A DNA stretch of 64,000 bases from the NCBI RefSeq assembly GCF_002113885.1, contig NW_018408821.1, forward strand, positions 465,907 to 529,906. The letters are read 5' to 3'. The translations under genes and the position numbers were made by a program. Source of the DNA: Mizuhopecten yessoensis. Lineage: Eukaryota. Below are positions 14,070 to 38,780 of this stretch, piece after piece. Within the stretch, counting starts at the first letter, position 1, and every line of letters starts with the position of its first letter. The notes below the pieces were generated by a model. The model saw only the letters and a program-made list of their open reading frames with translations. It did not search any database and was not told the origin of the DNA.

Positions 14070-17000
14070 CTATGTCTCCTTTGACATGACTTTCCTGTTG
14101 GCCTTTCTTGGGTAAGATATGATCCGTCCACCCGATGCCATTTTTGTGAGTCTGCGCAAACGCGATTCTGTACTATCAGCATCTGAGTTGTTATCCTCCT
14201 GTTGTTCACCAGAGCCACTGGTAAACTCGTTGTAGATGGTATAATATCTCAAGGGATCAGGGCTGTCTTCCGTGTCACTCTCCTCTGCAGACGACAACTC
14301 CCACATAGTATAATCGTCCATAACTGACTCGGCAGGTTCTGACTCGGCGATAATTCCGTCTTTCATATTCTGGAGGATATCTTGGTTAGTTGCACATTCT
14401 GCTGCAAGTTCGTCACGTTTCTCAAGGACAGACGCTGTCTCGGCGATGTCATGATAGCTGTAATCCTGAACTGCAGATGACATCTTCAGAAAATATCTGC
14501 GAACCATTGTAACCGTTCCCGTAGAGGGATTAAACATCTTCACATTTTCAGAACTGACACTGGGTCCGCCAGCTGCCGAAGTCATATTATTATAACTGAA
14601 GAGGGAAAGAAGGTCCTCAAGGAGGATGATGACGGATAGTTGCTTAACCCTCCACTGAGAGTACCTGTTTTGCAGGAGGCGGGTACACGTAGATGACATC
14701 ATAGCTATGAGGGCGTTGATCAAGAGGATGTAGGTAGTCATAATGAAGAGGACGTAGAGGCTATAAGCTAACCACTTTTGCTTTGTCTGATCAAGGAAGA
14801 GCAATTCATTGATACCAATCATTAACTTAAACATTTTGAACAGTGACGCTCCATACATGGTACGATGTCCCGGTTCGTCTTCCGTTCCGTCAATGGCAGG
14901 CGTGTTTTTGTCCTGGTATACAACCGTCATCGTTGTGGTAAACGAAAACAGCTGTAAAGCTATTATTACTGAAAAACGGAAGAAGTCGCCAAAGACGACT
15001 CTCTGAATCATCGTCGTGAAGAAACCAAACAACCGCCAGCCTCCGAGGAAGAATGCATTGAACCACCACGCCGCTAGGACGGCTACTACCATAGGAATCC
15101 CATCATGGTTATACCAGTATCGGTGCATGATGGCGTCCGTGATGATTCCCACGGAAAAGACATAGATAAAACCAATGTAATTCAAATTATTGAGCATGTA
15201 TCCTAAAGTGTTTGGTTTCCGTATTTTCATCATTGTTTCCAACATCCCAATGATCAGATAAACGACGGCTATTGCAACCAAAATCCACCTTGTGATGGCG
15301 ACAAATCCTTCTTTAGTGACAGACGTTCCTGGTACTGGCGTAGTAGAGTCACTTGATGAGTTACCAGATGAGGAGCCAGGCTGCGAATCTGACACACTGA
15401 ATACGACCTCGGATCTGTTGACAGCAAAGGCGCTCAGGACAAGGACGAAAGCGTAATGGAATATCATCCAGGCTATGTACGGGACTCGGTAGAAATGCCA
15501 CTTGTTTTTAATGAGGAGCTTTATCGGTGGGAGGTCTATAAGAGCAGCAACATCAGAAAAACCCAGTTTAGAGTTACACATCATTTGCAGGATTGCTTCC
15601 CGTTTAGGATACCGCCTAAACAGTGAACAGCCTACTTCGGACTGGAGCTCACCTTCGTCATCAACACCCCGCTGACTGCAGTATTTGGCAATAGTGTCTA
15701 TCTCTGTAATGTCGTACGACTTCTCGTCGAACAGGCCGTCTCGTTGGCCGAGATGACAATACACGTCCTGTAGATTAAGAATATCGTTGAATATTTCCGT
15801 CAGTCCGTGCTTAGCGGCCAGTTCTAGCGGAGTGTAGTATTGGTTGTTCTTTATAAACCAAACGTGACGATAGTCGTACGTTACCGACTTTCTTGTCTCC
15901 TTTTCTCCTTCACCTGATTTCCTGTTTTCATGCGGATTGATCATTGCTTGGCCTTGCTGTTTTTTCTTCAAGTCTCGAAACTTATTCTCCAGCTTTTTCT
16001 TTTTCAGTCTTGTTTGCTTTGCCTTTTCCATCAGGTTCTTTATCTGTTCATGTATGCATGACGTCATCTTTCTAACATGTTTCACTTTGTCCCTGTACAG
16101 TGCAGCATACTCGATCAAGACGTGAAACACGGTGTCTCCATTCCCATTGATAACATAAGGGACTGCGCCGTATTTTATAAGTATCTTCACCATATATTGG
16201 TCATTCCGTAGTGCCGCCACAAATAATGGTAGCTCGCCCATCATGACTGTATGTTGAAAGTTAGTTCCAGTCGCTCGTACGTTTACCAACTTACGTATAT
16301 GCTTGTGAGAACTCAGCCAGGCCTTTTTCAAAATTATGTCAAATGCCTCCCGGTTTCCCGAGGCGATTGCTATGTGGAGAGGCGTCTGTCCAAAGTAGTC
16401 TGGATGCGTCCGCGGAATATATGCCAAATCCGGACAAATCTGGAGTAAGATACACAGGAGTTCTCCGGTATCTGGAAAGTTGATGATATAGTGCAGAAGC
16501 GTCTCATCTCTTTCATAGACATTTTCGTTCCTTTTTAGTTCGCGCTTGAACCGCCATTTTCTAACATACGTTTCATGCACAGATTTTGTGAATCGTGTGG
16601 CTAAGGCCGTGGCGAAGTGGAACTGGCGGGTATCCAGACATTGCTCGAACAATCGGAATGTTCTTTCGTCCTCGCTCTCGCCTAAAATGAAGAAATGACT
16701 CATTGTATTGCCTATACAATGTTACAACATCGGGATTTGTCTCAATACCGTAGCTGAAGTACGATAAAAGATGGTTTACTTTATATAAAACAAAACTGGT
16801 ATTTAAATGAAAACCAATTAAAGGTAAAACATATCCTGTAAAAATATTAATCATGTCATATCAAATGATCAAACTCGTTTAATTACTTCAATATGACATG
16901 GACAGTCGTGTAAGATCATTTATGTTCGTAGCGACATGGCACACATTTTAACCAGTGCTTTAACCCCAAAGTTAAAAATTGAACATAAGGATCGCTTTCA

Positions 17001-17565
17001 AGAAGATTGTAAACATCTTTCACAATCCGTGCCACGTTAGTAATACGCTTATTCCGTATGGGTCTGTGTACTTTTGAGTACATAATATATTATTTGTGTA
17101 TTTTTGAATACATAGTATATTAAAAGTTGTTGAAAATGAAGTTTTTATGGACTAAATACACATGCGTTTAGTTGTTTGGTGACGAGACAAATAGATATGT
17201 CAAGTTTTTCAGTTTACCATTGAATTAGCATTAAGCAATTTCAGAAGTCAAATAACTGTTTGACTGTACTTTAGAAAGGTCAAAACACATGTCAAATGAA
17301 ACTGTCGTTACCCAAGAGTTAAAGCACATTTTTTGGAGTCAAAAAATGTACACTCAAGGGTGTACTAAAAGTTGAGAAGTTAGGGGCAAAACTCTGCTGC
17401 AAAACTATTGTGAAGAATGTAATTAATTTAAAGAATACAATTATTTTGAACGTCATATATTACCGGCCTAGAAGAGAATTCATTTAATTATAAAATCTAC
17501 TTACCCTTATAGAATTGGCCCTTTTGAAAGGAGGAGAACCTGTTGGTCATCGAATCGTCATCCAT
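14070..17565 (-). CDS. TRPV-family cation channel, paralog A (~890 aa)
   Basis: complement(join(14070-16681, 17505-17565)), phase-1 GT-AG intron, exon 1 MDDDSMTNRFSSFQKGQFYK. Ankyrin repeats (GQTPLHIAI, GELPLFVAA, GDTVFHVLI, TPLELAAKHG), YDITEID linker, 6 TM segments, GDFFRFSVII, pore FKLMIGINE, S6 LLINALIAMM, TRP box QWRVKQL. Confidence 0.93.
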
Positions 17566-18239
17566 GTTGTCTTGTACAACGTAATGCCTGTACCGTGCCC
17601 TTGTTTGTTACAAGCTGTGCGGCCATTGTTTCGTAAATGGTAACCTGTATCTAAGACTATTGTTTAGTTGGAATTTTAGATTTGATTAAGATTGAAACAG
17701 TTTTATTGCCCTGTCACCTCAACGCGTATACTGGGAAGCACGTGCTCTGTCAAATGAGTATAGTTACAAGACTCGATTTCGATTGTGCTTGCATTAACAC
17801 TTGCTCTGAATGGACCCAAGCTTTGTTTGGGATTATCGGTACGTCAAGTGAATTTTAATACTAAAAACTATGCGACGCTATTGTTACGTAGATCTAACAA
17901 GGTTGTAGCTTGAAATTTGTAGATAGCACTTGGACGTACTCATGCCGTTATTTATTTATTCGGTACATACATACACTAGCTTCAAACAATTGTTCACGTT
18001 TAAAAAACAGACACACCGCGTTAAGTTTTGAATGGTTTGCTTATAGACATGTATTGTATTCTTGTATTCATTAAAGAAAGATCGATTGATTATTTGCTCT
18101 TGTTAAATAGACTTCTGTCATGCTTTTTAGGGGATACATGTATATGGTTTATAAAACAAAATGTATTTGCTTAACGTGGGAGCAGATGCCGTTATGTCGA
18201 ATGCTTACATTATAATGCAACGTTAGTATATATATATAT

Positions 18240-18653
18240 TTATCTCATTTCCATGTGTGTAAGATAGACCTGTCCAGGGTAAGTACACCCCATTTCACGT
18301 GACGTGACGTCACCAATTTGGAACTCTCCAATGCCGCAATGCGGAAAAGGCGACGTGATGAAATTAAAAACCTTTTACGATATATTTACCGTACACGTAA
18401 GGAAGATGTGATTAGTTTTCAATATAGGATATGTTAAATATGGCTGGCTGATTCGCGTTCGTCTAAAAAGCTCAGGGGGGAATTGATATTTTCAAAATGT
18501 TGGCCAGTCCAAATGCATTTTCATGGTTTCTAAGCTTATTCTGGTGGTTGGAATGAGAGAAAAATGTGCCCAAGGGTGAAGGAGAGGGATATTCCACTCT
18601 CGGGTGGAATTTCCCTCTCCTACACCCCGGCCTGAGCATGGAAGAGTCTTATA

Positions 18654-18655
<2 letters not shown>
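18240..18655. mobile_element. Hairpin-bearing interspersed repeat, possibly related to the 45660 family
   Basis: Internal inverted repeat GAGAGGGATATTCCACTCTCGGGTGGAATTTCCCTCTC and GTGACGTCA motifs; organisation resembles 45660-46420. Confidence 0.45.

Positions 18656-18656
<1 letters not shown>

Positions 18657-18690
<34 letters not shown>
18657..18690. repeat. (TG)n microsatellite
   Basis: About 17 TG units. Confidence 0.95.
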
Positions 18691-18691
<1 letters not shown>

Positions 18692-19331
18692 ACGCTTATT
18701 GCGTTTAATGGTAAACTGTACAATCGTGTACTGTTCTGTTAATTATTTGTACACGTTTTTTTACGGTATGAAGCCTACTAGTATTTTAATGATAGACTGG
18801 ACCCGGTTACGATGTAAAGCGTTGCTAGCTTTCTGTTTATGCGGAACAACCGGTTCGTCTGTTTTTAAATGAACCATGTTTTGATAAAAATCATGGCGGA
18901 CCTGCATTTTCAAGGCTCGCCTGAAAGCACCATCAGATTACTAGGTCCGAGCTTATTTCATAACCAAATAACTCTGGTTCGACCGTTTGAATTGCGATAA
19001 ACGAAAGCGACCTTGTCTCCGCCCGGTGAAACTATGAGATACGCTTTTGTTAGGATGGCTTAATATATTTAATATTTTGTATGACATTTGTTGTAGTTTT
19101 GCCTTTAGTAATCTCGGTCGTCCTAACTCGCTTTCCCTGTAAAGTGTTGGCTGGTGATGCTGATGATGAAGTTATTTTCGGTCTTCCATTGGCTACATCT
19201 GTTAACAAATATAACTATTTCAGAACAATGAAAAAGAAATTATAAACGATACAATTTCCTAAAGGAATGGTGTCTGATTTTGACTTCTTGAATATCTGTG
19301 ATTTGAGGCCTTTGGTATATATCGCGTTTCC

Positions 19332-19736
19332 TTATTAGGGCCCCGCGTCGGATATGCAGACGGACTATAGTAATCTATATGTCCGTCCGTCCGTCCACAC
19401 TTTCGTTTCCAGAGATTATTACGGAATCCATAAGACTGATCGGTTTGAATTGACATGGTGCTACACTGTGATATGTAGATATGGAATAAGGGTGTATAAA
19501 GTTTGTAAGTTCAATGTCAAGGTCACTGTTACTAAACTATACTGGGGTGTGCGTATGGTCCCAGTATCGGAATTCAAAAGACTAATCTTGAAATTTGACA
19601 TGATTATACACTGACATTTGGATGTGCTAAAGGTAATTGAACAAAGGTTTTAAGGTCAAGGTCATTGTTACTAAAATGGACCACGGGTATGGTCAGGCAC
19701 GTGGCGGGGCCCTTACTTTCCTGTCAGTGTTCTAGT
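19332..19736 (+). mobile_element. Non-autonomous Helentron-like element
   Basis: Subterminal IR AGGGCCCCGC / GCGGGGCCCT, (GTCC)n microsatellite, two internal units ending TCAAGGTCAxTGTTACTAAA, ends TTCTAGT. Confidence 0.65.
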
Positions 19737-21602: not shown

Positions 21603-24340
21603 TTAAGTTTTCTCTTCTATACTTGATTCCTCCGACGATGACGCTTCGAAAGGTTCTACAACCGTCCCTCGTCTTCCAACATGGAACACCTCCGTGGCAG
21701 CCTTCCTCACCAATTCTTCATTCATTATGTCATAATCCGAATCATAATTCAAGTCATGTTTCAAATACTCGTAAAATATAGCCGGCACACGAGGTCGTGG
21801 TATTAGGTCCGACATGTCTGGTTCTAAGTCTGTCATATCTGATTCCTGCTGAGGCACGACTGGTTTAGTTTGTTGTCTTACAAACGGAAGAAAGAAAGCG
21901 GAAGCAGCCATCCTCTTAAGAATATTTTTGTTGATGTTGTTGTTGAGTGATTCCTGATTGCGTTTTTGTTGGGCCTCAGTTATTTCTTCAATGTCCTCCG
22001 CTTTCATTTCAATCATATCGTTTTGAAGGGTTTTCATATCCAGGAGATACCTGACCTGAGTCGTAAAAGTCTTTGTCACGGGGTCATACACTTTTTTCCT
22101 TTTTTCCTTTATGATCTCACTGCGCGTCACGGGATCATAGTAACTGAGAATCACATGGAGACAATTTTCGAGCATCAATATGACTGAAAGCTGTTGTATC
22201 CGCCATTCTGAAAATTTGTTTTGCAGGATGAAGGAGCACGTTGAAGACATCATAGCAATCAGGGCGTTTACCAGGAGAATGTACGTAGAAAGTATGTAAA
22301 CCACGTATAAAGAGTTTGTCAGCCAAGTCGACCTGGCTACTTTTGTTGAGTTGATCCCTCCGATTCCCAACATCAGGTTAAACATGGTGAACAGAGATGT
22401 GTCAAATGACTTCGTATAGGAGGGCTCATCTACGTTTGATTCGATGCTTGGGACGTTTTTACCTTGATACATCGTGTGGACACTGGCAGAGAACGATATC
22501 AGCTGGAATGCTATTATCACTGAAAAACGCAGGAAATCCCCAAAAATTACTCGTTTAATCATCACAGTGAAGAAACTGAACATCTTGAGTCCTCTTAGGA
22601 AAAACAAGTTGAACCACCATCCGGTTAGAACTGATATCAGAAGAGGCACCCTGTTGTGTTCGTAATCCACGAACTGCCAGATGATATCTGCAAGGAGACC
22701 CATCCCGCAGATCATCAATATACTGATGTAGTCCATGTTGCACTTCCAGTACAACTTGGCGTTCGGTTGTAGGAATTTGGGGATGATCGCCGTAACGCCC
22801 AAAACCACATAGACAAGTCCATAGACAAATGAACTCCACATACACAAATTGACATAGTTCACCTGGTGTGGGGATGGCATAGATTCTGCTGTTGAACCTG
22901 AATTGGAAGGATTGAATTTCAGTTCGGACAGGTTGACTGTGTACGCACTCAACAAGATAATAAAGATGAGGTGAATGGCCATCCACGCAAAGAACATCTT
23001 GCTGTACAGTTCCCATTTGAGTTTGATCAGACCTCGCAGAGGTGGTATTTCAGTGATTTCTACAATATCCTTTGGCCTCATCTTGTTTCCGAACATCATC
23101 TCAAAAACAGATTCCGATTTCACGCCTTTGAAATTGAAAGGCCTAACCGTTTGTTCTCCTGAGAGGAGTTGGGACTTGTAGTTGGTGATGGAATCTACCT
23201 CTGTGATGTCGTAGTGTTTCTCATCAAAAAGACCGTCATTTTTGTTTTCGAAACAGTAAACGCTCGGTAGATTAAGGATCTGGATGAAGATTTCTACCAG
23301 CCCATATTTTGCTGCAAGTTGAAGAGATGTAAGATTATGGTTATTCTTCATGTACCAGATTTGGCGCAAATCTTTGTCACTTGTGTTCTCAGTTTTTTCA
23401 GGATTAGTTCCTTCGTCAAAGGATGATTTTATTCTACCGTCATTCTCGTTTCGACTGTGTTTGTCATAACGCCGTTGCTTTCTCCTCGAATGTCTTTTCT
23501 GGTTTTCTACGACAACTTTCTTGTGCAGGAAGGTGATCATACGTCTAGCATCAGCTAATTTGTTTCTGTTAATCACGATGTACTTTATTATGGTATGAAA
23601 TACATTATCTCCCTTCCCATTCCTCACAAACAGTGATGCTCCTCTTCGAAGAAGAAGGTCAACAATGTTTTCTTTAAACGTTAGAGCACTGACAAACAAT
23701 GGTATTTGTCCCATCATAACGGAATTGTTGAAGATTTTGCCTGTAGCACGAGCATTCATTAGTGCACGCAACTTCACTTTCGAACGCTCTGCAACGTTCA
23801 GTATCTCCTCACAGGCCTGGACATTTCCCGTTACTACGGCAATATGAAGTGGTGTCTGTCCTGCAAACGCCATGCTGAACCTCGGCACCATGAGCAGGTC
23901 AGGACAGATGGCAAGGATGTGAATGATACAGGCGACGTTTTCCTCACTGTTATGCATCAGACATATATGAAGGAGAGTCTCGTCTGTCTCCATGCCGTCT
24001 TTCGATCTCCGCCAACGTAACAATGGTTGTCCATGAATGTCCTTGTTAAAATTCCGGAGTTGATCCCTCGCCAAGGAGAAGTTCCTGGTGCTGATTAATC
24101 TGTATACTTGATCGATTTCTCTATGACATTTTGTGTCTGTTGAAAGAAGATAAACATTTTGAGAATGAGATATGTTTTATGACAATAAGTGTATGACTCA
24201 ATACAGTATTCTGGATATTATTAAAACATAAATAATAAATGCTTACGTTTAGGTGTCGGCGTTGGTATTTCGGTATCTTTTCCAGGGCTTGCTGCTGTCT
24301 CCAAAGGGAACTGAACGAAGACCTTTTTCCTTTTTAACAT
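21603..24340 (-). CDS. TRPV-family cation channel, paralog B (~875 aa)
   Basis: complement(join(21603-24136, 24247-24340)), 110-bp phase-1 GT-AG intron, exon 1 MLKRKKVFVQFPLETAASPGKDTEIPTPTPK. Ankyrins (GQTPLHIAV, GDNVFH, TSLQLAAKYG), YDITEVD, GDFLRF, pore FNLMLGIGG, LLVNALIAMM, EWRIQQL. Confidence 0.93.
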
Positions 24341-25304: not shown

Positions 25305-25590
25305 GTAATACTTCCTTATACGCAGAGGGGGTATTTAGGTAATGTCTGGCGGTCCGTCGGTCCGTCGGTCCGTCCATGTATGTGAAGTAAAGAAAACTTA
25401 TAAATGCTATGTCTGATAAACGTCCCAACAGATTAACAGCATATTGACAACATCTTATGGAAACGTCGATTTATATACCTGGTTAGGGTTTGATGGTCAT
25501 TGGTCAGTATTAAAGGTCAAAGTTCACACTTGACCTCTATTTTGGTTGGATTGAGGCATATTAAGGTATCCAAGGAGCGTAATTTTTGTA
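25305..25590 (+). mobile_element. Degenerate Helentron-like element
   Basis: (CGGTCCGT)n microsatellite near the 5' end and GGTCA-rich core, as in the elements at 12457 and 19332. Confidence 0.4.
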
Positions 25591-27126: not shown

Positions 27127-30091
27127 TCATTGCATGGTTGACATCCATTTGCTAACACGAGCCTGAGTAGAGTTATCCTCAGGGATTTTAGGGAGCTCCT
27201 CCTTAAATTCACGGGTGTACGGCTTCAGTTTTGGCCCTTCAATGTCCCTCGTAAGGAAATCGTTCTCAACCAAAGGTTGTTCGTCACTCTTTTTCGGGCC
27301 AGAAATAGATTCCTCCATATTTTGTTTGAGTTTTTGGTTGACAGTTTTCCTGATCTCCTCCTGAGTTCTCCTTTTCATCACGTCGGTTTCCTCTTCGGTG
27401 AATGTCATCTTGCGAGACTGCATGTCCAGCATGTAACGCTGTTGGTTCCGGGAGGTCATGTTTATGATTGGATCGTATATGTCTTGGTAGCGCTTGTTTG
27501 CTGGACTGCGGGTTAAACGTTGGAGAAAGGAGACAAGGAACAGATCCTCGATGAAAAGGATGATTGACAGCTGCTGGATTCTCCACACCGAGTACTTCTC
27601 GGAAAGCACGCTCTCGCACGTGGATGACATCATGGCTATCAGGGCATTAAGCAAAAGGACATATGTCAGAAGGACAAAGAGAACAAAGAGAGTCAGAGCC
27701 AGCCATTTGACGCGAGCTTGGGACAGACATTCGATCTCCCCGAGCCCCAGCATCAGGTTGAACATGGTAATAAGTGTTGTGAAGAAGTGGTTGTCATCGC
27801 TTCCGTCAATGGCAGGAACATCTTTTCCTTGAAACATCGTGTGCATACACGTCGTAAATGCGAACAACTGGAACGCAATTATGACGGAAAATCGTAGAAA
27901 GTCCCCAAAAATTACCTCCTTTATCATAACCGTGAAAAAACTAAAGAGATGCCAACCACGGAGAAAAAAGACGTTGAACCACCAACCTGAGAATAGTGCG
28001 ATGATAAGTGGAATTCCGTCATGTCGTCCCACTGCCTGTGTTATCAGAACGTCCACAATCACAGCCAAAGCAAAGATCAACATCAGAAGGATGTATTCAA
28101 TGTTGTGCATGTAGTATCTATCCGGATTTGGTCGTTTTAGCTTCGAAATAACACAGAGGATGACAATAATGACGTAGAAGATGGCTATGATGAATGCAAT
28201 CCACTGGAACGAGGTGAGGAATAAGCGTAAAGACTGATTGTTCTTGAAGTAGTTACCTAACCCCGTGCCGGTGTTTTCTATCTCCGACTCGTGCCAGTAG
28301 GAACGTTCTACCGCGTATACACTCAGAAAAACCATCAGTACCACCTGGATCAGCATCCACAATGAATATAGAGAGACAACATTCTTCCATTTCTTCTGTA
28401 TCAACTTCTTCACTGGCATCATTTCTATGATGATAGAAGAAAATTTTCGAGTGTAGTTCTTATCAAACAGCATTTCCAGGATAGATTCCTTTTTTGGGAA
28501 GACGATTCGACAGCTGCTGCAACAAGTGTTCGTGTTCGTGTCTTCCTCGTTTGGCGTTTCTTCAATTTCTGTGTTAGCAATGGAATCTATTTCAGTGACG
28601 TCATACTTTTTGATGTCAAATAAACCCTCATCCTCGTTCTGAAAGCAATAGACATCCTTCAGTTCTAGGATGTATTCAAATATGTGAACCAGTTGGTGTT
28701 TTGCCGCTAATTTCAAGGGAGTTAACCCGTCTTTATCCTTCATCAGCCAGAGATGAACATAATTGTTAGAACGTGTTATGTTGCTCTTAATATTGTCTTC
28801 GTCAGGATTGTCAGAATTTTCTAATCGATGGATATCTTCCTTCTCCATTTCTTCTTTCTTCTTCTTGGTGATGTCTCTGAGGTGCCCGGTGAGATGACTC
28901 ATCATGCGTTTGACTTCGTCTTCTTTGTCTCTTTTTCTGCTCAGATACCTAATCATAGAGTGAAATATCGTATCATAACTTTCATTCCTTGTGCATATAT
29001 TAGCTCCAAAATCAATCAGCTTGTCTACCATGCCGAAATCAAATTTAAGCGCAGCAACAAAAAGCGGTAATTCTCCCATCATGACTGTTCCTTCAAATCT
29101 ACTTCCGGTCGCCCTAGTGTTTAGTAGGTTCTCAAGCATACGGGGTTTTTCACCAACTTCGTCTTCATTCTCTCCTTGTTTTTTTAGGACTATTTCATCA
29201 CATCTTTTTGCAGTCCTAAGAATGAGAGCTATGGCCGCATTGTTGGCTCGCGTAATGGCGATATGAAGTGCGGTCTGCCCCTTGTACTCCGATCCCTTCT
29301 TCGCCTCGGAGACCAGCACCGGGAACTTGTCCAAGATAGCACTAACAATCCCGCCGGTGTCGTACTTGGCTGCATGATGGAGAATAGTCTCGTTGGTTGT
29401 GCGTTCGTTTGGTTTCTGGGGTATGTCGAGTTGAAATTCCCTGATGTCTAGTTCCAAGGCTACAAATTTTTGAAGTGTTGCCTTGGCTTCATCGATGTCC
29501 TTCTCCTCAATGAACTCCTTCAAAAGTTGTATCAGTTCAGTCCCTACAAAAATTATAAATCTTCTATTAGTTACAACACAGACATTAGCATCCTTTTGTG
29601 GGACGAGTTTGTGCATATATACAAACTAACGCTAAGGCCGACTTCAATAGTTCAAAAATTGTTAAAATCTAGAACAAAATTCTAAGGTAATTGCTTGTTA
29701 TAGATCTATATATTCATCGTAAGCATGAACTAAAATAGTTCGTCATTGATTCAAATGGACAAAAGCAAATACATTCAGAATTTAGTAAATCAGTATAATG
29801 AATGCAGTGTTTACTTTATATTATTCCGATAAGAATTTAATATTACCGAGATATACTTCTGGGTTGGAAGTAAATTATACTGCTACAACATATCACTGTA
29901 AATTATTTGAGGACTTAAATATAATTGAATTCTTCAAACTGCTTACCGTCTTCGTATCTCCTAGCAGATGCAAGGTCCTGGCTATCCAGCGATTCTGTCT
30001 CCCTGTAAGCAAGAGGTTCTCCATTTTCTAAGAGATACCTCAAGTGGGTCAGAGTAGCAGGGTCTAAATGTATACCCGTACCGTCTGCCAT
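27127..30091 (-). CDS. TRPV-family cation channel, paralog C (~853 aa)
   Basis: complement(join(27127-29543, 29947-30091)), phase-1 GT-AG intron, exon 1 MADGTGIHLDPATLTHLRYLLENGEPLAYRETESLDSQDLASARRYED. Ankyrins (ETILHHAAK, GQTALHIAI, GELPLFVAA, TPLKLAAK), YDVTEID, GDFLRF, pore FNLMLGLGE, LLLNALIAMM, VWRIQQL. Confidence 0.93.
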
Positions 30092-32039
30092 TTTAACGTT
30101 TTATTTACCAAACGTTTGGTCCGACATGGTGATTGTATGTGTATTGGTATAGGCAGATACACATCCTGTTATAATCAATGGCGTTTATGGGGCCGAGGAT
30201 GGGGGATATAATTTTATTAATACATTTACCAAATAAATGTTTTTATGTTGAATCTTTCATGTATCCGACAAAAACGAAAGAGAAGTCAAATATTGTTTTA
30301 TAGAAGTACATTAAGGGGAACCTGGCAGCTTGGCCTACAGCAGTGCCGAAAGGAAGAATTAGATATTTAGTGGGTAATCCGTCTCTCCCCTCTCGACGCC
30401 CTCTATCAGATTGTGTATAGAAACACATATACGTCACGCTTTTGTGTTTTAAACAGATCAGTATAATGAGATAGGGAATGCGATACGCCTTTATTAAATG
30501 TTGGGGACATGTCAGCGCCATTGCACACAATGATTGTTATCTGTACAAACAAACCATTCAACTGTGTAACTAAGGACGCGCTCATAACGCATACAGCAGT
30601 TCCACTCATGTATGTAACGATCGGCTGTTTGTTTAACGCACAGTGCATTCGGGTATATGGAATTATCTCCCCTTTTTAACTGCCTGTCTGAATTGTAGTT
30701 TTTACAAGCCTTAGTCCGTGTATTAATAGATTTCCGGCTTATATGAAGATAGAATGAAATAGATAAGTTTCTTGCATGTAAAATATCATTTAGAGACAAA
30801 ATCAGATAAAATTGCAAATATAGTTTATCATATAATTCTAAATGATTCTGATATCACTATTGAGCTAGAAATATCAGCTCTGCTGCACACATTTTCTTTT
30901 GTGTCAAAGTATTCAAGTGTAACGCGGGCCTTGATGTTTAAGTAACGGCGCATTCGGGTACTGAGAATCGTCTCCCTTATTTAGCTGTTTTGTAGAATTG
31001 CGCTGGTAAGAACACTTGAGGTAAAGGATACTTACAATTTAGTCTATATCATTACTATTATCACAGATGTGAAATATTGGTTAACGTCTGTTACAAAAGA
31101 AGTATTCCTTAAAAGTCACATGTTGCAAATGCAGTTTATAAAATTACAGTTGTTCGAAAGAGTGTTAGAAAGCAGAAAAAAAGATGATAAAAAAGTTAAA
31201 AAAATGCAGGGATCGAATCCAGGACTTTTACATTGAAAACCGTACACTTTGCCAAAGTTGCCATATAAAAATAAAAAATAAACAGCACCAAAGCGAAAAA
31301 AACACACTAAATTTTTGACAAGTCAAAAAATATATGAGTGGAACTTTTCTTCGCGATTGTAACTGACGCAATAGTATCAGTAACTTTAACTGAGTCGCCA
31401 GATAATGTTAAAGTATCTTTTTTTTCTTTTTGTGATTGATTGCTGAAAATTTCAACAACTATAAAAAAAAAATCTCAAGATATGGTAATACTAATTTCTT
31501 GTGGCGTTAATTTCTTAAATTGTGTAATATAAATAATGGAACCGGCTTATATAAAGAGCACTTTTCGAGAAAAGTTGTTTTGTAAATATTTTCATGTTGA
31601 ACGCTGATCAAAACGGTTCGATATGACATCAATTTTAAGTGATACAAGTTAATCACAAGTGTACATATCGCTACACATTACACATCACCATTGGCCACTC
31701 AGGTAAATCACGTATTGCACGTAAATTACACATCTCAATGAAAAAGTAATTCGATAATAAGCTAGACTGAACTGCTCCTCCTACTGTCGTCGACGCATGC
31801 GTATATTGATGTTAAAAGGTTTGTTAATAGACGCAAGAGTCACGAAGGTGATCAAACGAAGAACGTTCTTCTAATCACATCTCCATGCAAATGTATCGTT
31901 CTCGTGCATATCTAAATACTATTGATCTTACATTAATTATGTAAATGAGTTGTATCAAATTATACATTTCACTATTGTTTGCCCTGATGTAAGCGCGCAG
32001 GGGGTCTTAATGTGGAATGAATATCATATACGATAAAAT

Positions 32040-33680
32040 ATTTCTTATATAGTAAATAAGATATCTTATATAAGATTATATATACTTATAAAAGATATCT
32101 CATTTAATTTCTACATAAGATCAAATAAAACATAAGATATCTTACATCGTAGATAAGATATCTTATATAATATATAAGATATCTTATACACAATATTAGA
32201 AATAGCATCTATTTAAGATTTTTATATATTATATTAGATATCTCATCTATATAAGATATTTATATATTATATTAGATATCTCATCTATATAATATTTTTT
32301 TTAATATTTGATATCTCATCTATATCAGATATTTAGATGTGATATTAGATATCTCATCTGTATAAGATATTGATATAGTATATTAGATATCTCATCTATA
32401 GAAGTTGTTTAAGATATTTTAGATATCTCATCTATATAAGATATCGCATCTTTATAAGATATCTCATCTATATAAGATATTTGTATATTATATAAGATAT
32501 CTCATCTATATAAGATATTTATTTGTTATATAAACATTCTCATCTATATAAGATATCTTATATTAGATACATCATTTTAGATATCTCATCTATATATCTT
32601 ATTTTGATATCTCATCTATATAATATATCTTAGATATTATTTTGATTTATCATCTATATTAGATATTTATTTATTATATAAGACATCAATATCAGATATT
32701 TATATGTTATTTTAGATATCTCATCTATATAAGATATCTTATTTTAGATATCTCATCAATATAAGATATTTATATTATATAAAATATCTCATCTATACAA
32801 GATATTTATATGTTATATTAGATATCTTTTCTTTATAAGATATTTATATGTTATATAAGATATCTCATCTATACAAGATATTTATATATGATATAATATA
32901 TCTCATCTATATAAGATATGTATATGTTATATAATAATTCTCATCTATATAAGATATCTTTTATGTTATTTTAGATATCTCATCTCTATTATATATTTAT
33001 ACCTATATAAGATATCTCATCTATATACGATATTTATATGTTATTTTAGATATCTCATTTATATAAGATATCTTATATATTATTTTGATATCTCATCCAT
33101 ATAAGGTAATTTGTATACTATTTTAGATATCTCATCTATATAGGATATTGATATATTACATAAGATATCTCATCTATATAAGATATTTATATATATGACA
33201 TTAGTTATCTGATCTATATAAGATATTTTTATGTTATATAAGATATCTCATATATATAAGATATTTATGTTTTGTATAAGATATCTCATATATATATAAG
33301 TTATTTATCTGTTATATTAGATATCTCATCTATATAAGATATTGATATGTTATGTAAGATATTGATATGTTATATAAGATATTGATATGTTATAAAAGAT
33401 ATTGATATGCTATATAAGATATCTCATCTTTATAAAACATTTATGTATGATATTATATATCTCATCTATATAAGATATTTATATGTTATATCAGATATCT
33501 CACCTATATAAGATATTCATATTTTATATTAGATATCTCATCTATATAAGATATTTATATATTATATTAGATATCTCATCTATATAAGATATTTATATGT
33601 TATATAAGATATGTCATCTAAATAAGATATTTTTATGTTATATAATATATCTCTATTGTCTTATATAAGATCTCTTATAT
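32040..33680. repeat. ~1.6-kb AT-rich satellite array
   Basis: Dozens of copies of AGATATCTCATCTATATAAGATATTTATATGTTATATA-like units, built from ~19-bp subunits in a ~38-bp period. Confidence 0.93.
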
Positions 33681-34751
33681 AATTCGATGAACTACAGGAT
33701 CGACATTGCTCCTTTAATAAATGTTACGTTGGCTTGCCACACTTATGCATTTTCACGTCCGGTCGGGGAATCAAAACCCGGTCGTCTGTGTTAAAGGCGC
33801 CACCCGACAACCCATTCCTGTGTAAACATTCTATGTTAAACGTTTTTGGCTGACATAAGAAATATCTAATAACTTTTGTATTAATAACGCTTTCATCCTA
33901 AACACGCATTTTAATAATTATCTTAATTATCTTTTACACCATGTGAATGACTAATATGGACACGCAACTATTTTGAACCAAACATTAATTTGTAATTATA
34001 TCGTAAATCGTTAGAAATATTTTTTGTCGTTTATTAGGGTTTTCCCATTCAGTGTTTTGAACCACTTTATTGTGGAATATTGTTCTACAACGATACTTAC
34101 TACTGTTCGTTGGGATTGTTATCTTTTTCGTTCCTAATTGCATGCTTCCTTCTTTCTTTCTCTTATGATAAAAATACTTTAATCTAATTTTGAGAACAGA
34201 ATTTTCTTAATGCCTACATGCTTACATACTCTTTATCCAGCAGTTAGTCAATAAATATGCTAATGACAACTTTTGTAAAGTTTAAAATGTTTCCCTTTCT
34301 ATCCTAACCTTTTAAACATTACATCACGATTTCATTGATTTTAGTAGGAATCATGCTTAAAATTCGTTCTAAAATTTAAATGCAGGTTCCCGTTAATTTT
34401 GAGTACTTTTAAAATATTGTTATCACATATTTCTTGTTATACGTTAGAAATGACTCTGTACGGATAATTTAAAAACAATTATATACGCTGCTAATTCACA
34501 ACTGAGCAGGTTGTAATCTGTACTATGTCCATACGATTTCTCTGCGTAGATACAGAGCAAGACTTAATGAAATAAATTTTAGCAGTGTTTACCTATTACT
34601 TACACGTAAATCCCAAGTAAAAATTCTATATGCATACACTACTGGTCTTAATCTTAAGAATTTGCTATCACTGGATACATACGTGTTTATACAAGTTTAA
34701 AGCCTCTTTGATGCTATAACAAACCCGATGTCTAATTAACCAAGAGTGAGA

Positions 34752-34817
34752 CATTGACATCAGGCGAGAACTCATATATAACCGCATTGACATCAGGCGA
34801 GAACTCATATATAACCG
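34752..34817. repeat. Perfect 33-bp tandem duplication
   Basis: CATTGACATCAGGCGAGAACTCATATATAACCG occurs twice in tandem. Confidence 0.9.
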
Positions 34818-35766
34818 CTGTTCAGAAACTACTAATGCATGTGTGATTATGAAATCAGGAGAAACTAAGTCCTGACTCATTTCGATTATAACAAACGCTT
34901 TTATATAGGTAATAAATATTTTAATTAATTCAATTAAAATATAAACTAGGCATCATCATATCGCCTGACTGAATGTTAATGAACGAATACATGCGATCAA
35001 CTGTATTGATTATATCACGTTATGCGTTTAGATTGATTTTGTAATTGGTATGACACGAGCATGAATTGAATTTTAAATGTTTAGCAATTGAAAAAATGGA
35101 GTAATACATTTTCAGTTCACCGTTATTCAGATTAACTGAAACGTTATATTTTCATATCAAATTATGCCTTCTTCACAATGACTATTAAATGTAATTTTCA
35201 ATATTCCGTTCCACTAGACAAGTTTTGTTGACCCTTAACCCTTTGCAATTTCAGACCATATGAAATAATCAATACAAATTCACTTATTAGCCTAAATGGA
35301 GGCCTTAGTTCTAACGATCTATCGAGTTCCACCGAATCAGACGTTCTAGAATATCGTTAAAACACATTCTAATCGTAATGTGGACCGTTACATGAGTCCT
35401 CAAAACTGTCACAGAGTCGCAAGTGATGCATCCAAATGAGCCCGGAATATCATCTACAACAGTATATCAATATCCATGTAAAGTTTCGTTTGTATTGCGC
35501 CAGTAGAATCTTAGCAAATTTCCGGAAATCTCTGGACAGAAGATATACAATATTAAAGACGCAGCAAAAACTTTAAGTTCCAAAACTCCCCGGAAGAAAA
35601 GAAATATCTTATTTCTTCCGTGATCTTGAATTATCGTGAATTGAATATTATTGATAGAAAAACCGCACTTCAAAAGTATTTTTCATAATAGCGGTTGTCT
35701 CTAATTCAGACAACGTTTTGAAACGGAGCGCAATCGTCGCATTGACATGTACATAATCAAATGCTA

Positions 35767-35960
35767 GTCGGGTGGCGCAGTGAATAGCGCACTCGTCTTT
35801 CACCAAGGCGGCCGGGGTTTGATTCCCCGATCGGATGTGCGGAGATATGGGGTCACCTGTCACGTGGGTTTTTTCCAGGTACTCCGATTTCCTCCTGCAC
35901 GTTAACATCCGAGCCAACAAGAATGATTAATACAAGTTGTAATAATTTGTTTCATGATTG
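35767..35960 (+). mobile_element. tRNA-derived SINE (V/Meta-SINE-like core)
   Basis: A box GGTGGCGCAGTGAA, B box GGTTTGATTCCCC, core GTGGGTTTTTTCCAGGTACTCCGATTTCCTCC. Reverse fragments of the same family at about 31975-32020, 33745-33810 and 61625-61705. Confidence 0.7.
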
Positions 35961-36171
35961 TTGTAAAAGAATTTTTCTTTTGAATCAATATGACGTAGCA
36001 CATGTTAGTTGTCGCAGTACCACAATGATAGTGTAATTTACATGTAGTGGGTTCATAAAGTAAGATTTCAAAGTAAATGTAATTAAAATAAGAATATTAT
36101 ATCATCACCAGTATCGATGATATTTTGGCTGGTATATATATCGGACAAACAGCTTACAAAATAATTATCAT

Positions 36172-38780
36172 CTATTGGATGTGTTCGTGGTAAACCACGT
36201 GTCCTAACCCCGCAGATTTTGACACGTGTTTGGTGTTATGTATCTGACGCGCCGCTTGCAAGTCGCGTTCGGTTGGTTCCACCTCTGTCGCGCCGACTTC
36301 GTGATAGATTGGGACGATGGAAGCAGTTGGGGCCGCGATAACAGTAGGGGCCAACAGATAGTCGTCAGTCTCTGTTTCCCTTGACACAAGAATAGGCTTC
36401 CGTTCCTCCTTTTTCGGCACCATGAATTTGCTTTCCTTTTTAATGGACTGTAGAAGCTCTGTATTGACAGTGTTTGCTATTTCTGCCTGTGTTTTCTTCT
36501 GAATTATTTCAGTGTCCTCCTCGGAAGCGAAGTCACCCTGTAAGGACTGCATCTTCAGGTAATAGCGGACATGTTTTTTTATTGTCATTTTCGACGGATG
36601 GAATATTTCCATCTTTGTTAACTTTGCCGGACATCGTAAGATCCTATCCATACAAAAGAGACAAAGAAGGTCCTCAATGAATAATATGACAGACAACTGT
36701 TGTATCCGCCATTGTTCGTACCGATTTTCTAGAACCGTGCCACATGTCGCTGACATCATAGCAATTAGTGCGTTTAACAGAAGAACGTATGTTAACAGAA
36801 CAAATCCAATGAAGAGAATGATAGATAACCATGGCACTCGAGCTTCACGTAACCCATTGATATTTGACAACCCCAGCATTAGACTAAACATTGACAACAA
36901 GGTGGATCCAAACTCCAGCAATGTGCTCGTTTCTGTTGAAGAGTAAATTCCTTCAATGTTCGGAATACCTTGGCCTTGATAGACCGTATGCATACATGTT
37001 GTGAATGCTACAAGTTCAAGCCCGATGAATACGGAAAACCGGAATAAGTCGCCGAATATGACACGCTGTATCATGACGGTAAAGAAGCTAAACACCTGCC
37101 AACCCCGTAAAAAGAAAACGTTGAACCACCAGCCCGTCAGCAGAGCAAAGACAAGAGGGACACCGTCATGAACCTCGAGAGCAAACGTCAGCAGTGTATC
37201 CAGTAGTAAACATATAGCGAACATAAACACCATGGTTATGTACCCGATGTTGTGTTGCCAGTAACGAGAGCGATGGGGGCGTTTCATTTTGGGGAAAATG
37301 AGGAGTAGTCCGATAAGAAAATATATTATTCCAAATGCAAACTCTATCCATTGTGACACATTAACTATCCAAACGGAGATCACGTGATCGGTGTTTGTAT
37401 AATTTGCTGCCCTTGGGAACTTTGGGAAGTTCAGGCTAGTCCGTTCCACTGCAAACACACTGAGGACGACCATCAGAATAAAGTGGATCACCATCCAGAA
37501 TATGTACGTGCTCTTGTACAAATTCCATTTTGCTTCAATGAGAACTTTGAGTGGTTGAAGCTCCATTAACTCGAAGGCGGCGGAACTCTTGTAGTTATTA
37601 TCGAACATCATTTCCAAGATGGAGACCGTCGTAACTGACCCATGGATACCTCTACAACAACTTCGCCCAGTGTTACCATCATCATCATCATCATCATCAT
37701 CATAATCATTCACATCATCGGCAGACATTGTTTGTGATTTCGTGTTTCCTATGGAGTCAATCTCTGTGATATCGTACAGCTTAATATCAAAAAGGCCGTC
37801 ATCGGCACTGAACAAGCAATAGATATCCTCTATGTTGAGAATGAACTCGAATAAGGTGACCATACCATACTCAGCGGCTAGCTGTAACGGTGTTTGCGAG
37901 TCGTCATTTTTGAGAAACCAGACGTGAGTGTATTCATTACAGGTTGTTTCTTCCCACTTTCCTTTTGTTTCTTTCTTTGGTTGAGCGTCCCAAGCTATTT
38001 TCGTCTTTTTCTGGTCTAGTGGAGGGAAGTTACGAGTGGATGACAGACTGTGATGATAACCATTTCCGATTGGTTTTACTTCACTGTCGTCCTCATTTTC
38101 TGTTTCCTCCTCGTCCTCCTTCTCTTCGTCCTTCTTTTTTGACGGTGCTTGTTTCTGTATGGTAGTTTTGGTCAGTTGAACAAGGCGGTCATGCAGATAT
38201 TCCATCATCTCCCGTACCTCGCATGCCTTGTCGGGATACACAGCGGCGTATTTGATGAGGGAGTGGAATATGGTATCTCCTTTACTATTTTGTTGATATA
38301 ACTTAGCTCCCGTGTCTAACAACTTATCCACCATATCTTTGTCGAATTTAAGCACAGCTACAAATAATGGTAGCTCTCCCATCATAACAGTGTTAATGAA
38401 CAACCTCCCCGTCGCTCTAGTACTCAGCAAAGTGCGCAGAGATTGCGGAGACCGTGCGGCAACATTCAACATTTGATTAAATGCCGTCAAATTGCCCTTA
38501 GTGATAGCGATGTGGAAAGCTGTTTGACCGGCATACTGCTCACACGAACGCGCCTTGAGAATGAGATTTGGCGCGATTTGTAGGATACGTGACGTGAGCT
38601 CACCATCATCTTGGTATTTGGCGGCAATATGGAGAAGCGTTTCGTCTGTATGGTAGCGATAGTCCAACACCTGAAGTTCGTCAGTTTGTCTCTGGAGTTT
38701 CTCAAGTATCCACCGAGATCGGGCGGAGTTTCGTTCCTGTATATAGCGGACTAGTCTATCCAGCTTCGCCGTGGTAATGC
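36172..38780 (-). CDS. TRPV-family cation channel, paralog D (main exon; ~870 aa total, first exon uncertain)
   Basis: Open frame from the AG acceptor at 38781 (phase 1) to the stop at 36172. Ankyrins (ETLLHIAAK, GQTAFHIAI, GELPLFVAV, GDTIFH, TPLQLAAEYG), YDITEID, GDLFRF, pore FSLMLGLSN, LLLNALIAMM, QWRIQQL. Candidate phase-1 start exons: ATG-T at 39135-39132 or ATG-CCT-G at 42560-42554. Confidence 0.92.

What the first reader, a model, noticed from the sequence alone, without database searches (positions are those of the whole stretch)
14070..38780. Tandem array of four intact, highly diverged TRPV channels, a candidate sensory or Ca2+-transport receptor repertoire
Seen: four same-strand paralogs of 853-890 aa, all with open frames, conserved ankyrin/TM/TRP-box cores and unalignable N- and C-termini. 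Established: TRPVs are tetrameric cation channels, and invertebrate TRPVs such as Nanchung/Inactive and OSM-9/OCR work as heteromers. Inference: an old lineage-specific expansion kept by purifying selection, possibly forming combinatorial heterotetramers for chemo-, thermo- or osmosensing or for epithelial (mantle) Ca2+ transport.
Basis: partly seen in the sequence, partly recalled or inferred. Interest (0 to 1): 0.75.

Follow-up and report, generated by a model that had tools for sequence, protein, structure and literature searches.

The report
Scallop-specific four-gene TRPV channel array
Four intact, old, strongly conserved copies of a TRPV-type ion-channel gene sit head-to-tail in the Yesso scallop genome; the array is shared by other scallops, and two copies have lost the acidic pore residue that normally lets calcium through. 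This is a real but fairly ordinary lineage-specific gene-family expansion.

Summary
Each gene has a short 5' coding exon, a phase-1 intron at the same position, and one exon of about 2.5 kb. The genome is Mizuhopecten yessoensis, and RefSeq already names g3 and g4 'TRPV5-like'.

The four copies are 36-43% identical. With their scallop orthologues they form a 100/100-supported clade inside the molluscan 'TRPVC/D' group. They are not orthologues of TRPV5/6, Nan/OCR or Iav/OSM-9. Argopecten irradians has the same gene order, g4-g3-g2-g1-TGT. Pecten maximus has at least g4-g3-g2.

Orthologue dN/dS is 0.04-0.20, so all four are under purifying selection.

New here: the selectivity-filter acidic residue is kept in g3 (GLGE) and g1 (GINE) but replaced in g2 (GIGG) and g4 (GLSN). 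These states are conserved in every orthologue examined, across up to three scallop genera.

Heteromer formation and sensory or Ca2+-transport roles remain speculation. Tandem TRPV expansion in bivalves is already published, so this is a new member of a known kind, of modest interest.

The parts
14070..16681 (-). g1 exon 2. This is the large coding exon and includes the stop codon. It holds the ankyrin domain, S1-S6, the pore (filter G-I-N-E), the TRP helix and the C-tail.
   Evidence: ORF. Acceptor TTCATTTTAG at 16681 and an 890-aa model. 72% identical to A. irradians P0001. dN/dS 0.09.
17505..17565 (-). g1 exon 1 coding part (61 nt, MDDDSMTNRFSSFQKGQFYK-G), donor GTAAGT, followed by an 823-bp phase-1 intron.
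   Evidence: tblastn with the exon-1 peptide of A. irradians P0001 gives 57% identity over 21 aa, E 1.4e-4. Model.
21603..24136 (-). g2 exon 2. Filter is G-I-G-G, with no acidic residue.
   Evidence: ORF. Acceptor at 24136 and an 875-aa model. Orthologues at L003:18597-21170 and L001:3230-5803. dN/dS 0.12-0.20.
24247..24340 (-). g2 exon 1 coding part (94 nt), donor GTAAGC, followed by a 110-bp phase-1 intron.
   Evidence: tblastn with P. maximus g2 exon 1 gives 61% identity over 31 aa, E 1.9e-7. Exon length is the same 94 nt as in P. maximus and A. irradians.
27127..29543 (-). g3 exon 2. Filter is G-L-G-E, the canonical type.
   Evidence: ORF. The spliced model equals RefSeq P0080 (853 aa) exactly. 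dN/dS 0.05-0.13.
29947..30091 (-). g3 exon 1 coding part (145 nt), donor GTAAGC, followed by a 403-bp phase-1 intron.
   Evidence: tblastn with the P0041 N-terminus gives E 1e-14. Model is identical to P0080.
36172..38780 (-). g4 exon 2. Filter is G-L-S-N, with no acidic residue.
   Evidence: ORF. The spliced model equals RefSeq P0079 = XP_021375257.1 (871 aa) exactly. dN/dS 0.04-0.07. AF2 model has pLDDT 75 and pTM 0.73.
42554..42560 (-). g4 exon 1 coding part (ATGCCTG, 7 nt), donor GTATGT. The 3773-bp phase-1 intron contains the N gap at 40469-40707.
   Evidence: Pattern found and model built, identical to P0079. The same 7-nt exon is present in P. maximus and A. irradians. A conserved block just upstream at 42586-42805 matches P. 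maximus.
3400..10600 (+). Flanking multi-exon queuine tRNA-ribosyltransferase (TGT) gene. It serves as the synteny anchor downstream of g1.
   Evidence: tblastx is collinear with the TGT gene next to the A. irradians g1 orthologue. Pfam PF01702 hits on three exons.

Best explanation
The region holds four functional paralogous genes for subunits of TRPV-type tetrameric cation channels. Each subunit has an ankyrin-repeat domain, a linker, S1-S6 with a pore loop, a TRP helix and C-terminal beta strands.

The genes belong to the molluscan branch that Morini et al. 2022 called TRPVC/D. This branch lies beside all vertebrate TRPVs and is distinct from Nan/OCR and Iav/OSM-9.

One two-exon founder gene (tiny 5' exon, phase-1 intron, one large exon) was duplicated in tandem at the DNA level. 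The branching order (g4,(g3,(g2,g1))) mirrors the physical order. These duplications happened before the scallop genera Mizuhopecten, Pecten, Argopecten and Ylistrum separated. All four copies have since been kept by purifying selection.

The copies have diverged in the pore. g3 and g1 keep the acidic filter residue, so I expect them to pass divalent cations like TRPV1-4 (inference). g2 (Gly) and g4 (Asn) have lost it, so I expect low Ca2+ permeability and weaker divalent block as homomers, or a role as modifying partners in heteromers (inference). The stimuli, tissues and partners are unknown.
For: - TRPV identity. PDB phmmer gives TRPV6 at 5e-32, ahead of TRPV5, TRPV2, TRPV1 and Nan/Iav. Pfam finds ankyrin repeats. 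The AF2 model has the expected helices, and its top 50 Foldseek hits are all TRPV1-6, aligned over about 770 columns. The TRP-box W-R-x-Q-Q-L-S aligns with vertebrate TRPV3 and TRPV6.
- Gene models. g3 and g4 are identical to RefSeq proteins. All four first coding exons are 1 mod 3 in length (61, 94, 145, 7 nt) with GT-AG sites at homologous positions.
- Phylogeny. The careful IQ-TREE run gives the array clade 100/100, each gene with its orthologues 100/100, and g2+g1 100/99. The P. maximus g4 orthologue is XP_033761183.1, one of the two sequences named TRPVC/D in PMC9664204 Table S1.
- Synteny. A. irradians has g4-g3-g2-g1-TGT-PAP2. P. maximus has g4-g3-g2. TGT is present in the window.
- Selection. 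NG86 dN/dS is 0.04-0.20 over whole genes and below 0.2 in the ARD and TM cores, with the highest values in the charged insert and the tails.
- Pore. The filter states GLGE, GINE/GLTE, G[IL]GG and GLSN are each conserved within an orthologue group, against LGLGD in canonical bivalve genes.
Against: - There is no expression evidence.
- dS is near saturation for the Argopecten comparisons (1.2-2.0), so those ratios are approximate.
- The P. maximus g3 orthologue carries a frameshift ('LOW QUALITY'). P. maximus g4 has a shortened C-tail. Either could be an assembly error or a lineage-specific decay.
- No P. maximus g1 orthologue and no M. yessoensis g1 protein model surfaced.
- The permeation predictions rest on mutagenesis of vertebrate TRPVs recalled from general knowledge, not on any test of these proteins.
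Confidence: 0.85

Rival explanations
1. The four subunits work as combinatorial heterotetramers. In this reading the filter-neutral g2 and g4 are obligate partners of the filter-acidic g1 and g3, analogous to Nan/Iav or OSM-9/OCR.
For: - The four genes are kept together in one order and orientation across scallop genera.
- Two copies have lost the filter acid, yet they are the slowest (g4, dN/dS 0.04-0.07) and fastest (g2, 0.12-0.20) evolving copies, and both are under constraint.
- Nan/Iav heteromer structures exist in the PDB. A mollusc Nan/Iav-type pair works only when co-expressed (bioRxiv 10.64898/2026.03.27.714695).
Against: There is no co-expression or interaction data. Tandem linkage is what local duplication leaves behind and does not imply co-assembly. 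The known obligate invertebrate heteromers belong to the TRPVA/B clades, not to this one. Vertebrate relatives are mostly functional as homomers (general knowledge).
Confidence: 0.2
2. The genes are TRPV5/6-like constitutively open epithelial Ca2+-entry channels used for transcellular Ca2+ transport, for example in mantle shell formation.
For: The best pairwise PDB hits are TRPV6 and TRPV5, and RefSeq names the genes 'TRPV5-like' or 'TRPV6-like'. A coral TRPV5/6-like channel has been proposed for calcification (PMC12503276; abstract only).
Against: Vertebrate TRPV6 does not group with these genes to the exclusion of TRPV3. The filter is the G-x-G-D/E type seen in TRPV3, not the I-I-D type of TRPV6. 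g2 and g4 lack the acidic ring that confers Ca2+ selectivity. No tissue data are available.
Confidence: 0.1
3. One or more copies are unexpressed relics or pseudogenes whose frames happen still to be open.
For: Expression is untested. The P. maximus g3 orthologue has a frameshift, and no g1 protein model was found for M. yessoensis or P. maximus.
Against: Frames of 853-890 codons are open in M. yessoensis and in every orthologue examined except P. maximus g3, despite dS of 0.8-2.0. dN/dS is 0.04-0.20 for every gene and below 0.2 in the core domains. Splice sites and exon phase are conserved.
Confidence: 0.05
4. Each copy is simply the scallop orthologue of an already characterised conserved TRPV subfamily (Nan/OCR, Iav/OSM-9, TRPV1-4 or TRPV5/6).
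For: Only the database names support this.
Against: - The array clade is 100/100 and contains no non-scallop named sequence.
- The canonical one-per-species bivalve gene (P0021 and P0024) is a separate clade.
- An Inactive orthologue lies on another scaffold, scoring 542 bits to Drosophila Inactive, against 73 bits for g1.
- The published tree places the g4 orthologue at the base of the vertebrate TRPVs, in neither TRPVA nor TRPVB.
Confidence: 0.03

Closest known systems
Protostome 'TRPVC/D' genes of Morini et al. 2022 (PMC9664204), e.g. Pecten maximus XP_033761183.1 and XP_033732844
   Same: XP_033761183.1 is the one-to-one orthologue of g4, at 89% identity. g1-g4 cluster with it. Domain layout is the same, and the large coding exon has no introns.
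   Different: That paper sampled only two scallop sequences and noted a 'lineage-specific duplication'. It did not describe the four-gene array, its synteny across genera, the shared phase-1 intron or the filter divergence. XP_033732844 (P0024) is the canonical single-exon gene. It lies 3.95 Mb away on the same P. maximus chromosome and falls outside the array clade.
Vertebrate TRPV5/TRPV6 (solved structures such as 7s89 and 8tf2)
   Same: They give the best sequence and fold matches. S6 (L-I-A-M-M-S) and the TRP helix are similar.
   Different: They are not orthologues. The filter is G-L-G-E, G-I-N-E, G-I-G-G or G-L-S-N rather than I-I-D. The scallop proteins have an extra disordered K/E-rich insert after ankyrin repeat 4 and long divergent tails. 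They have 2 coding exons rather than about 15 (the latter figure is general knowledge).
Vertebrate TRPV1-4
   Same: They share the G-[LM]-G-D style filter that g3 keeps as G-L-G-E, and Foldseek gives whole-chain matches.
   Different: phmmer scores are lower than to TRPV5/6. Orthology is absent, and the ligand and heat determinants were not examined.
Nanchung/Inactive, OSM-9/OCR and Octopus Ovtrpv1/2 (TRPVA/TRPVB heteromers)
   Different: They belong to a different clade. g1 scores only 73 bits to Nan and Iav. M. yessoensis has its own Iav orthologue on scaffold C5459.
Tandem TRPV expansions in oysters (Fu et al. 2021, PMC8004665)
   Same: These are tandem duplications of TRPV genes in a bivalve. 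The paper's copy-number table already lists 4 'TRPV5' and 4 'TRPV6' for M. yessoensis.
   Different: The oyster duplicates are independent. No oyster sequence falls inside the scallop array clade.

Membership tests
TRPV channel family | N-terminal ankyrin-repeat domain followed by a linker with a beta hairpin | tested here: met
   Pfam Ank, Ank_2, Ank_3, Ank_4 and Ank_5 hits in all four proteins. The AF2 model of g4 shows paired helices at 51-317 and strands at 324-339, aligned to TRPV chains by Foldseek.
TRPV channel family | Six transmembrane helices with a pore helix and filter between S5 and S6 | tested here: met
   phmmer aligns g1 residues 371-699 to TRPV6 residues 292-608. The AF2 model has helices at 411-453, 465-502, 514-536, 543-560, 585-603, 626-637 (pore helix) and 652-678. 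Pfam Ion_trans itself did not reach E 0.01.
TRPV channel family | TRP helix/box directly after S6, with the conserved Trp | tested here: met
   W-R-[IV]-[QK]-Q-L-S at residues 676-702 of the models, in register with TRPV3 I-W-R-L-Q-R and TRPV6 L-W-R-T-Q.
TRPV channel family | Whole-chain fold match to solved TRPV structures | tested here: met
   All top 50 Foldseek hits are TRPV1-6, with E 3e-19 to 2e-16 and target-normalised TM 0.57-0.71.
TRPV channel family | Assembles as a tetramer and conducts cations | not testable with these tools
   Needs expression and electrophysiology.
Protostome TRPVC/D clade (Morini 2022) | Groups with the sequences that define the clade, outside TRPVA and TRPVB | tested here: met
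   The g4 orthologue P0004 is XP_033761183.1, listed as TRPVC/D. g1-g4 plus P0004 form a 100/100 clade inside a 99/99 molluscan clade that also holds XP_033732844.
Vertebrate TRPV5/6 subfamily | Orthology to TRPV5/6 | tested here: not met
   Fish and frog TRPV6 group with mammalian TRPV3 (97/95), outside the molluscan clade.
Vertebrate TRPV5/6 subfamily | Ca2+-selective filter with an Asp ring (I-I-D type) | tested here: not met
   The aligned motif is GLGE (g3), GINE (g1), GIGG (g2) or GLSN (g4), against fish TRPV6 G-L-I-D.
TRPVA (Iav/OSM-9) and TRPVB (Nan/OCR) | Orthology to Inactive/OSM-9 or to Nanchung/OCR | tested here: not met
   g1 scores 73 bits to Inactive and Nanchung, against 114 to TRPV6. 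A distinct locus, C5459, scores 542 bits to Inactive and falls outside the molluscan clade. No Nan, OSM-9 or OCR reference sequence could be put in my tree.

The most novel reading that the evidence does not exclude
The array encodes a scallop-specific modular channel system. The filter-neutral subunits g2 (Gly) and g4 (Asn) co-assemble with the filter-acidic subunits g1 and g3 to set Ca2+ permeability in different sensory or epithelial cells. This would be a heteromeric TRPV system that arose independently of Nan/Iav, inside the clade that gave rise to the vertebrate TRPVs.
Probability: 0.15. Interest if true: 0.6.

Novelty: new member of a known kind. Interest (0 to 1): 0.33.

Why it matters
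The array adds a dated, syntenic and selection-tested example of how the protostome sister lineage of vertebrate TRPV1-9 diversified. It also supplies four natural pore variants (E, E, G, N at the key filter position) on one conserved scaffold. These are ready-made material for asking how the filter acid sets Ca2+ permeability, and whether heteromerisation evolved outside the Nan/Iav clades.

It also corrects the misleading 'TRPV5-like' and 'TRPV6-like' labels for scallop aquaculture and physiology work.

It does not open a new category. Tandem TRPV expansion in bivalves and the TRPVC/D placement are both already published.

Tried and rejected
- Short public contigs as transcript evidence. Contigs carrying relatives P0002, P0003 and P0083 all show a polypyrimidine-AG acceptor upstream of the frame. 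They are therefore unspliced genomic DNA and say nothing about expression.
- Outgroup identity. I first took the three 1189-1220-codon loci (C1898 x2, C4270) for the Nan/Iav orthologues. PDB searches show they are ankyrin-rich proteins with a TRPV-like TM part and no Nan or Iav match among the 60 hits shown. They were kept only as a distant outgroup. The true Iav orthologue is on C5459.
- Timing of the founder copy. I asked whether it arose inside the scallop lineage or earlier in Pteriomorphia. An AU test does not reject uniting the array with the scallop canonical genes (p 0.168), so the question is unresolved.
- Retrogene origin of each copy. I rejected this because all four share a phase-1 intron at the same position. 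In addition, the canonical gene and the other TRPV-like loci in this genome also have one large coding exon, so intron poverty is a family trait.
- Assembly duplication. I rejected this because the copies are only 36-43% identical and are syntenic in two other genomes.
- P. maximus g1 orthologue. It could not be reached, because the fetched locus ends 1.7 kb past g2 and no protein hit appeared.
- Big representative search. It was not run. The operators called it costly, and the word search had already settled the family.
- Spliced models. They were joined only inside scripts, to measure lengths and compare with P0079 and P0080. Search tools received only exon-2 references or stored protein ids.
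- The N run at 40469-40707 was left as it is.


Full report
**Observation.**
- The interval holds four long minus-strand ORFs at 14070-16703, 21603-24074, 27127-29616 and 36172-38670. They stand out as islands of 42-45% GC in a background of about 35%.
- A tblastn search of the whole window with all four proteins finds nothing outside them.
- The ORFs of g2 and g4 begin at TTG and GTG, and homology runs upstream of the first ATG. This pointed to a spliced 5' exon.
- I mapped the known N-termini of annotated orthologues onto their own loci and then onto the window. This gives the following two-exon models:

| Gene | Exon 1 | Exon 2 | Length |
|---|---|---|---|
| g1 | 17565-17505 | 16681-14070 | 890 aa |
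| g2 | 24340-24247 | 24136-21603 | 875 aa |
| g3 | 30091-29947 | 29543-27127 | 853 aa |
| g4 | 42560-42554 | 38780-36172 | 871 aa |

- All models have GT-AG sites, and all first coding exons are 1 mod 3 in length (61, 94, 145 and 7 nt), so each intron is phase 1.
- The g3 and g4 models are letter-for-letter identical to stored RefSeq proteins P0080 and P0079.
- The only positional correction is that the 7-nt first coding exon of g4 lies 3.8 kb beyond the stated end. Its intron contains the N gap at 40469-40707.
- The spliced sequences were joined only inside scripts. Search tools were given exon-2 references or stored ids.

**Source genome.** The assembly has 987.6 Mb in 82,659 contigs. P0079 is XP_021375257.1 and P0080 is a second 'TRPV5-like' model. 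Both are from Mizuhopecten yessoensis on a 1.47-Mb scaffold. So the genes, or at least g3 and g4, are already in RefSeq under a BLAST-derived name. An older GenBank annotation had split g4 into fragments of 326 and 479 aa.

**What the proteins are.**
- phmmer against the PDB puts TRPV6 first (5e-32, g1 residues 371-699 against TRPV6 292-608). TRPV5, TRPV2, TRPV1, Inactive and Nanchung follow.
- Pfam sees only the ankyrin repeats.
- An AlphaFold2 model of g4, built on a 48-sequence alignment, has pLDDT 75 and pTM 0.73. It shows the ankyrin pairs, the linker hairpin, S1-S6, a pore helix, the TRP helix and two C-terminal strands.
- The model's disordered stretches are a K/E-rich insert after repeat 4 (236-277), an acidic loop (366-380), the S5-pore turret (607-623) and the C-tail.
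- Its 50 best Foldseek matches in the PDB are all TRPV1-6 chains, aligned over about 770 columns.
- The four paralogues are 36-43% identical to each other. They share 150 or so invariant positions concentrated in the ankyrin, TM and TRP regions.

**Relationships.**
- Word-index searches recovered named relatives from scallops, other bivalves, gastropods and a few vertebrates.
- In a careful IQ-TREE analysis (35 rows, 753 columns, LG+C20 PMSF), each window gene groups 100/100 with its orthologues. These come from Pecten maximus, Argopecten irradians and, for g3, Ylistrum balloti.
- The four groups plus three unidentified contigs form one clade at 100/100.
- That clade sits in an unresolved trichotomy with the canonical pteriomorph genes (ark clam plus mussel; oysters plus the scallop single-copy gene P0021/P0024). 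All of this lies inside a 99/99 molluscan clade.
- Fish and frog TRPV6 and mammalian TRPV3 lie outside the molluscan clade (the quick 51-row version is).
- An AU test does not reject uniting the array with the scallop canonical genes (p 0.168). The founder copy could therefore have arisen in the scallop lineage or earlier in Pteriomorphia.
- Within the array the branching order is (g4,(g3,(g2,g1))), with support 90/81 and 100/99. This is the same as the physical order and is what stepwise tandem duplication would leave.
- The P. maximus orthologue of g4 (P0004, XP_033761183.1) and the canonical gene (P0024, XP_033732844) are exactly the two scallop sequences that Morini et al. 2022 named 'TRPVC/D'. 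They placed them at the base of all vertebrate TRPVs, apart from TRPVA (Iav/OSM-9) and TRPVB (Nan/OCR).
- Independently, a separate M. yessoensis locus on scaffold C5459 scores 542 bits to Drosophila Inactive, against 73 bits for g1.
- The refuting condition 'each copy is a one-to-one orthologue of a characterised subfamily' is therefore not met.

**A correction to my own work.**
- The three loci I used as an outgroup (C1898 x2, C4270) are not Nan/Iav.
- They are ankyrin-rich proteins whose TM part resembles TRPV6.
- The main bipartitions do not depend on which of the outside sequences carries the root.

**Age and synteny.**
- In A. irradians (CM084267.1) the order is g4 orthologue, g3 orthologue, g2 orthologue, g1 orthologue, then TGT and PAP2. 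All are in the same relative orientation within about 40 kb.
- The window has the same TGT gene downstream of g1.
- In P. maximus (LR736839.1) I could see g4, g3 and g2 in order. The locus ends before a g1 orthologue would appear, and no g1-like P. maximus protein surfaced.
- Two contigs from one JGI sample (3300005037) carry a g3-like and a g1-like gene, at 55% and 40% identity. At least those splits therefore predate a more distant, unidentified relative.
- The canonical gene in P. maximus is a single-exon CDS 3.95 Mb away on the same chromosome.
- The shared phase-1 intron in all four array genes shows that the copies arose by DNA-level duplication of an already two-exon gene, not by repeated retroposition.

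**Selection.** Nei-Gojobori estimates on orthologue pairs are below.

| Gene | Comparison | dN/dS |
|---|---|---|
| g1 | vs Argopecten | 0.09 |
| g2 | three pairs | 0.12-0.20 |
| g3 | vs Pecten, two pieces either side of the Pecten frameshift | 0.05-0.13 |
| g4 | three pairs | 0.04-0.07 |

- dS is 0.8-1.0 between Mizuhopecten and Pecten, and 1.2-2.0 in comparisons with Argopecten. The latter is close to saturation.
- By domain, the first four ankyrin repeats and the TM core are the most constrained (0.01-0.18). The charged insert (0.15-0.65) and the tails (0.10-0.41) are the least constrained.
- The C-tail of g4 is 93% identical between Mizuhopecten and Argopecten, so it is functional despite being 'unalignable' between paralogues.
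- The refuting condition 'dN/dS near 1' is therefore not met.

**Pore.** I aligned the pore helix and filter across the tree.
- Canonical bivalve genes read L-G-L-G-D, like TRPV3 (I-G-L-G-D). Fish TRPV6 reads G-L-I-D.
- The g3 group keeps G-L-G-E.
- The g1 group has G-I-N-E or G-L-T-E.
- The g2 group has G-[IL]-G-G in all three genera.
- The g4 group has G-L-S-N in all three genera.

In vertebrate TRPVs this acidic ring governs Ca2+ permeability, Mg2+ block and ruthenium-red sensitivity. That statement is established knowledge of TRPV1 D646, TRPV4 D682 and TRPV5/6 D542/D541, recalled rather than tested here. I therefore infer two pore classes in the array. The loss in g2 and g4 is ancient and maintained. 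It argues against all four being TRPV5/6-style Ca2+-entry channels.

**Not shown.**
- The short public contigs with relatives are genomic, not transcripts.
- There is one indirect hint. RefSeq-type annotations in three species place a 7-nt coding first exon for g4, which an ab initio predictor would be unlikely to find. This is my inference only.

**Literature.**
- Fu et al. 2021 (PMC8004665) already report tandem TRPV duplication in oysters and list 4 'TRPV5' and 4 'TRPV6' for M. yessoensis in a copy-number table.
- The Chlamys farreri survey found only four TRPVs and no array (PMC8539334).
- I found no paper describing this array, its synteny or its filter states.

**Verdict.** The four genes are an ancient, scallop-lineage tandem expansion of TRPVC/D-type channels under purifying selection. 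The functional half (heteromers, sensory modality, mantle Ca2+ transport) is untested, and the pore data only partly favour it. The finding is a new member of a known kind and of modest interest. The conserved E/E/G/N filter series is its most useful lead.

Noticed in passing
G000:C1898:247500-254500, G000:C1898:273000-280000 and G000:C4270:172000-179500 (L005-L007): Three loci each have a single open frame of 1189-1220 codons. The N-terminal half matches long canonical ankyrin arrays (ankyrin-1, DARPins, NOMPC, TRPA1). For L006, the C-terminal part (787-1098) matches the TRPV6 TM region at 1e-27. This is an ankyrin-rich, TRPV-like architecture that is neither Nan/Iav nor the TRPVC/D type. Its class was not determined.
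   Followed up: partly
G000:C5459:240000-246500 (L010:1690-3684 +): A 665-codon open frame is a clear orthologue of Drosophila Inactive (1.4e-161, 542 bits). Much of the scallop Iav gene is therefore also one large exon. Large-exon structure seems general for TRPV-like genes in this genome.
   Followed up: partly
L003:10315-12829 and L002:11757-14192 (Pecten maximus): The P. maximus g3 orthologue is split into two overlapping frames by a frameshift near L003:11927-12012 (RefSeq 'LOW QUALITY PROTEIN'). The P. maximus g4 orthologue ends about 65 residues early compared with Mizuhopecten and Argopecten. Whether these are assembly errors or real decay was not resolved.
   Followed up: partly
window 32171-33671: An AT-rich tandem array with units of 38 nt (also read as 18-20 nt) spans about 1.5 kb. 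It lowers GC to 0.20 and lies between g3 and g4.
   Followed up: no
window 8567-9003: A 38-nt tandem repeat of 11.5 copies lies inside the TGT gene span, presumably in an intron.
   Followed up: no
window 56860-60110: This stretch of higher GC (0.40-0.43) has tblastx similarity to a P. maximus region annotated with RT_RNaseH domains, and to a region downstream of A. irradians g4. It looks like a retroelement relic. The 204-aa ORF at 57641-58255 has no Pfam hit.
   Followed up: partly
window 30092-30584 and 42586-42805: These non-coding blocks lie at or just upstream of the first coding exons of g3 and g4 and are conserved with P. maximus in tblastx. They are candidate promoter or 5'-UTR sequence.
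   Followed up: no
window 14070-17565 (g1): A search with g1 returned no identical or near-identical M. yessoensis protein, whereas g3 and g4 returned theirs. g1 may be missing from the public protein sets for this species.
   Followed up: no
L016 and L017 (JGI sample 3300005037); L018 (Logan SRR26445940): Genomic contigs from unidentified hosts carry array-type genes. P0003 is g1-like, P0083 is g3-like, and P0002 is g1-like at 58% identity. Each has the same acceptor-like tract upstream of the large exon. The array lineage therefore reaches beyond the named scallop genera.
   Followed up: partly
window C-tails of g1-g4 (e.g. g4 residues about 825-835): A short motif, roughly [IV]-P-I-[FY]-x-E-[FYV], recurs in the otherwise divergent C-tails of the paralogues and of P0003. 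It may be a conserved linear motif.
   Followed up: no
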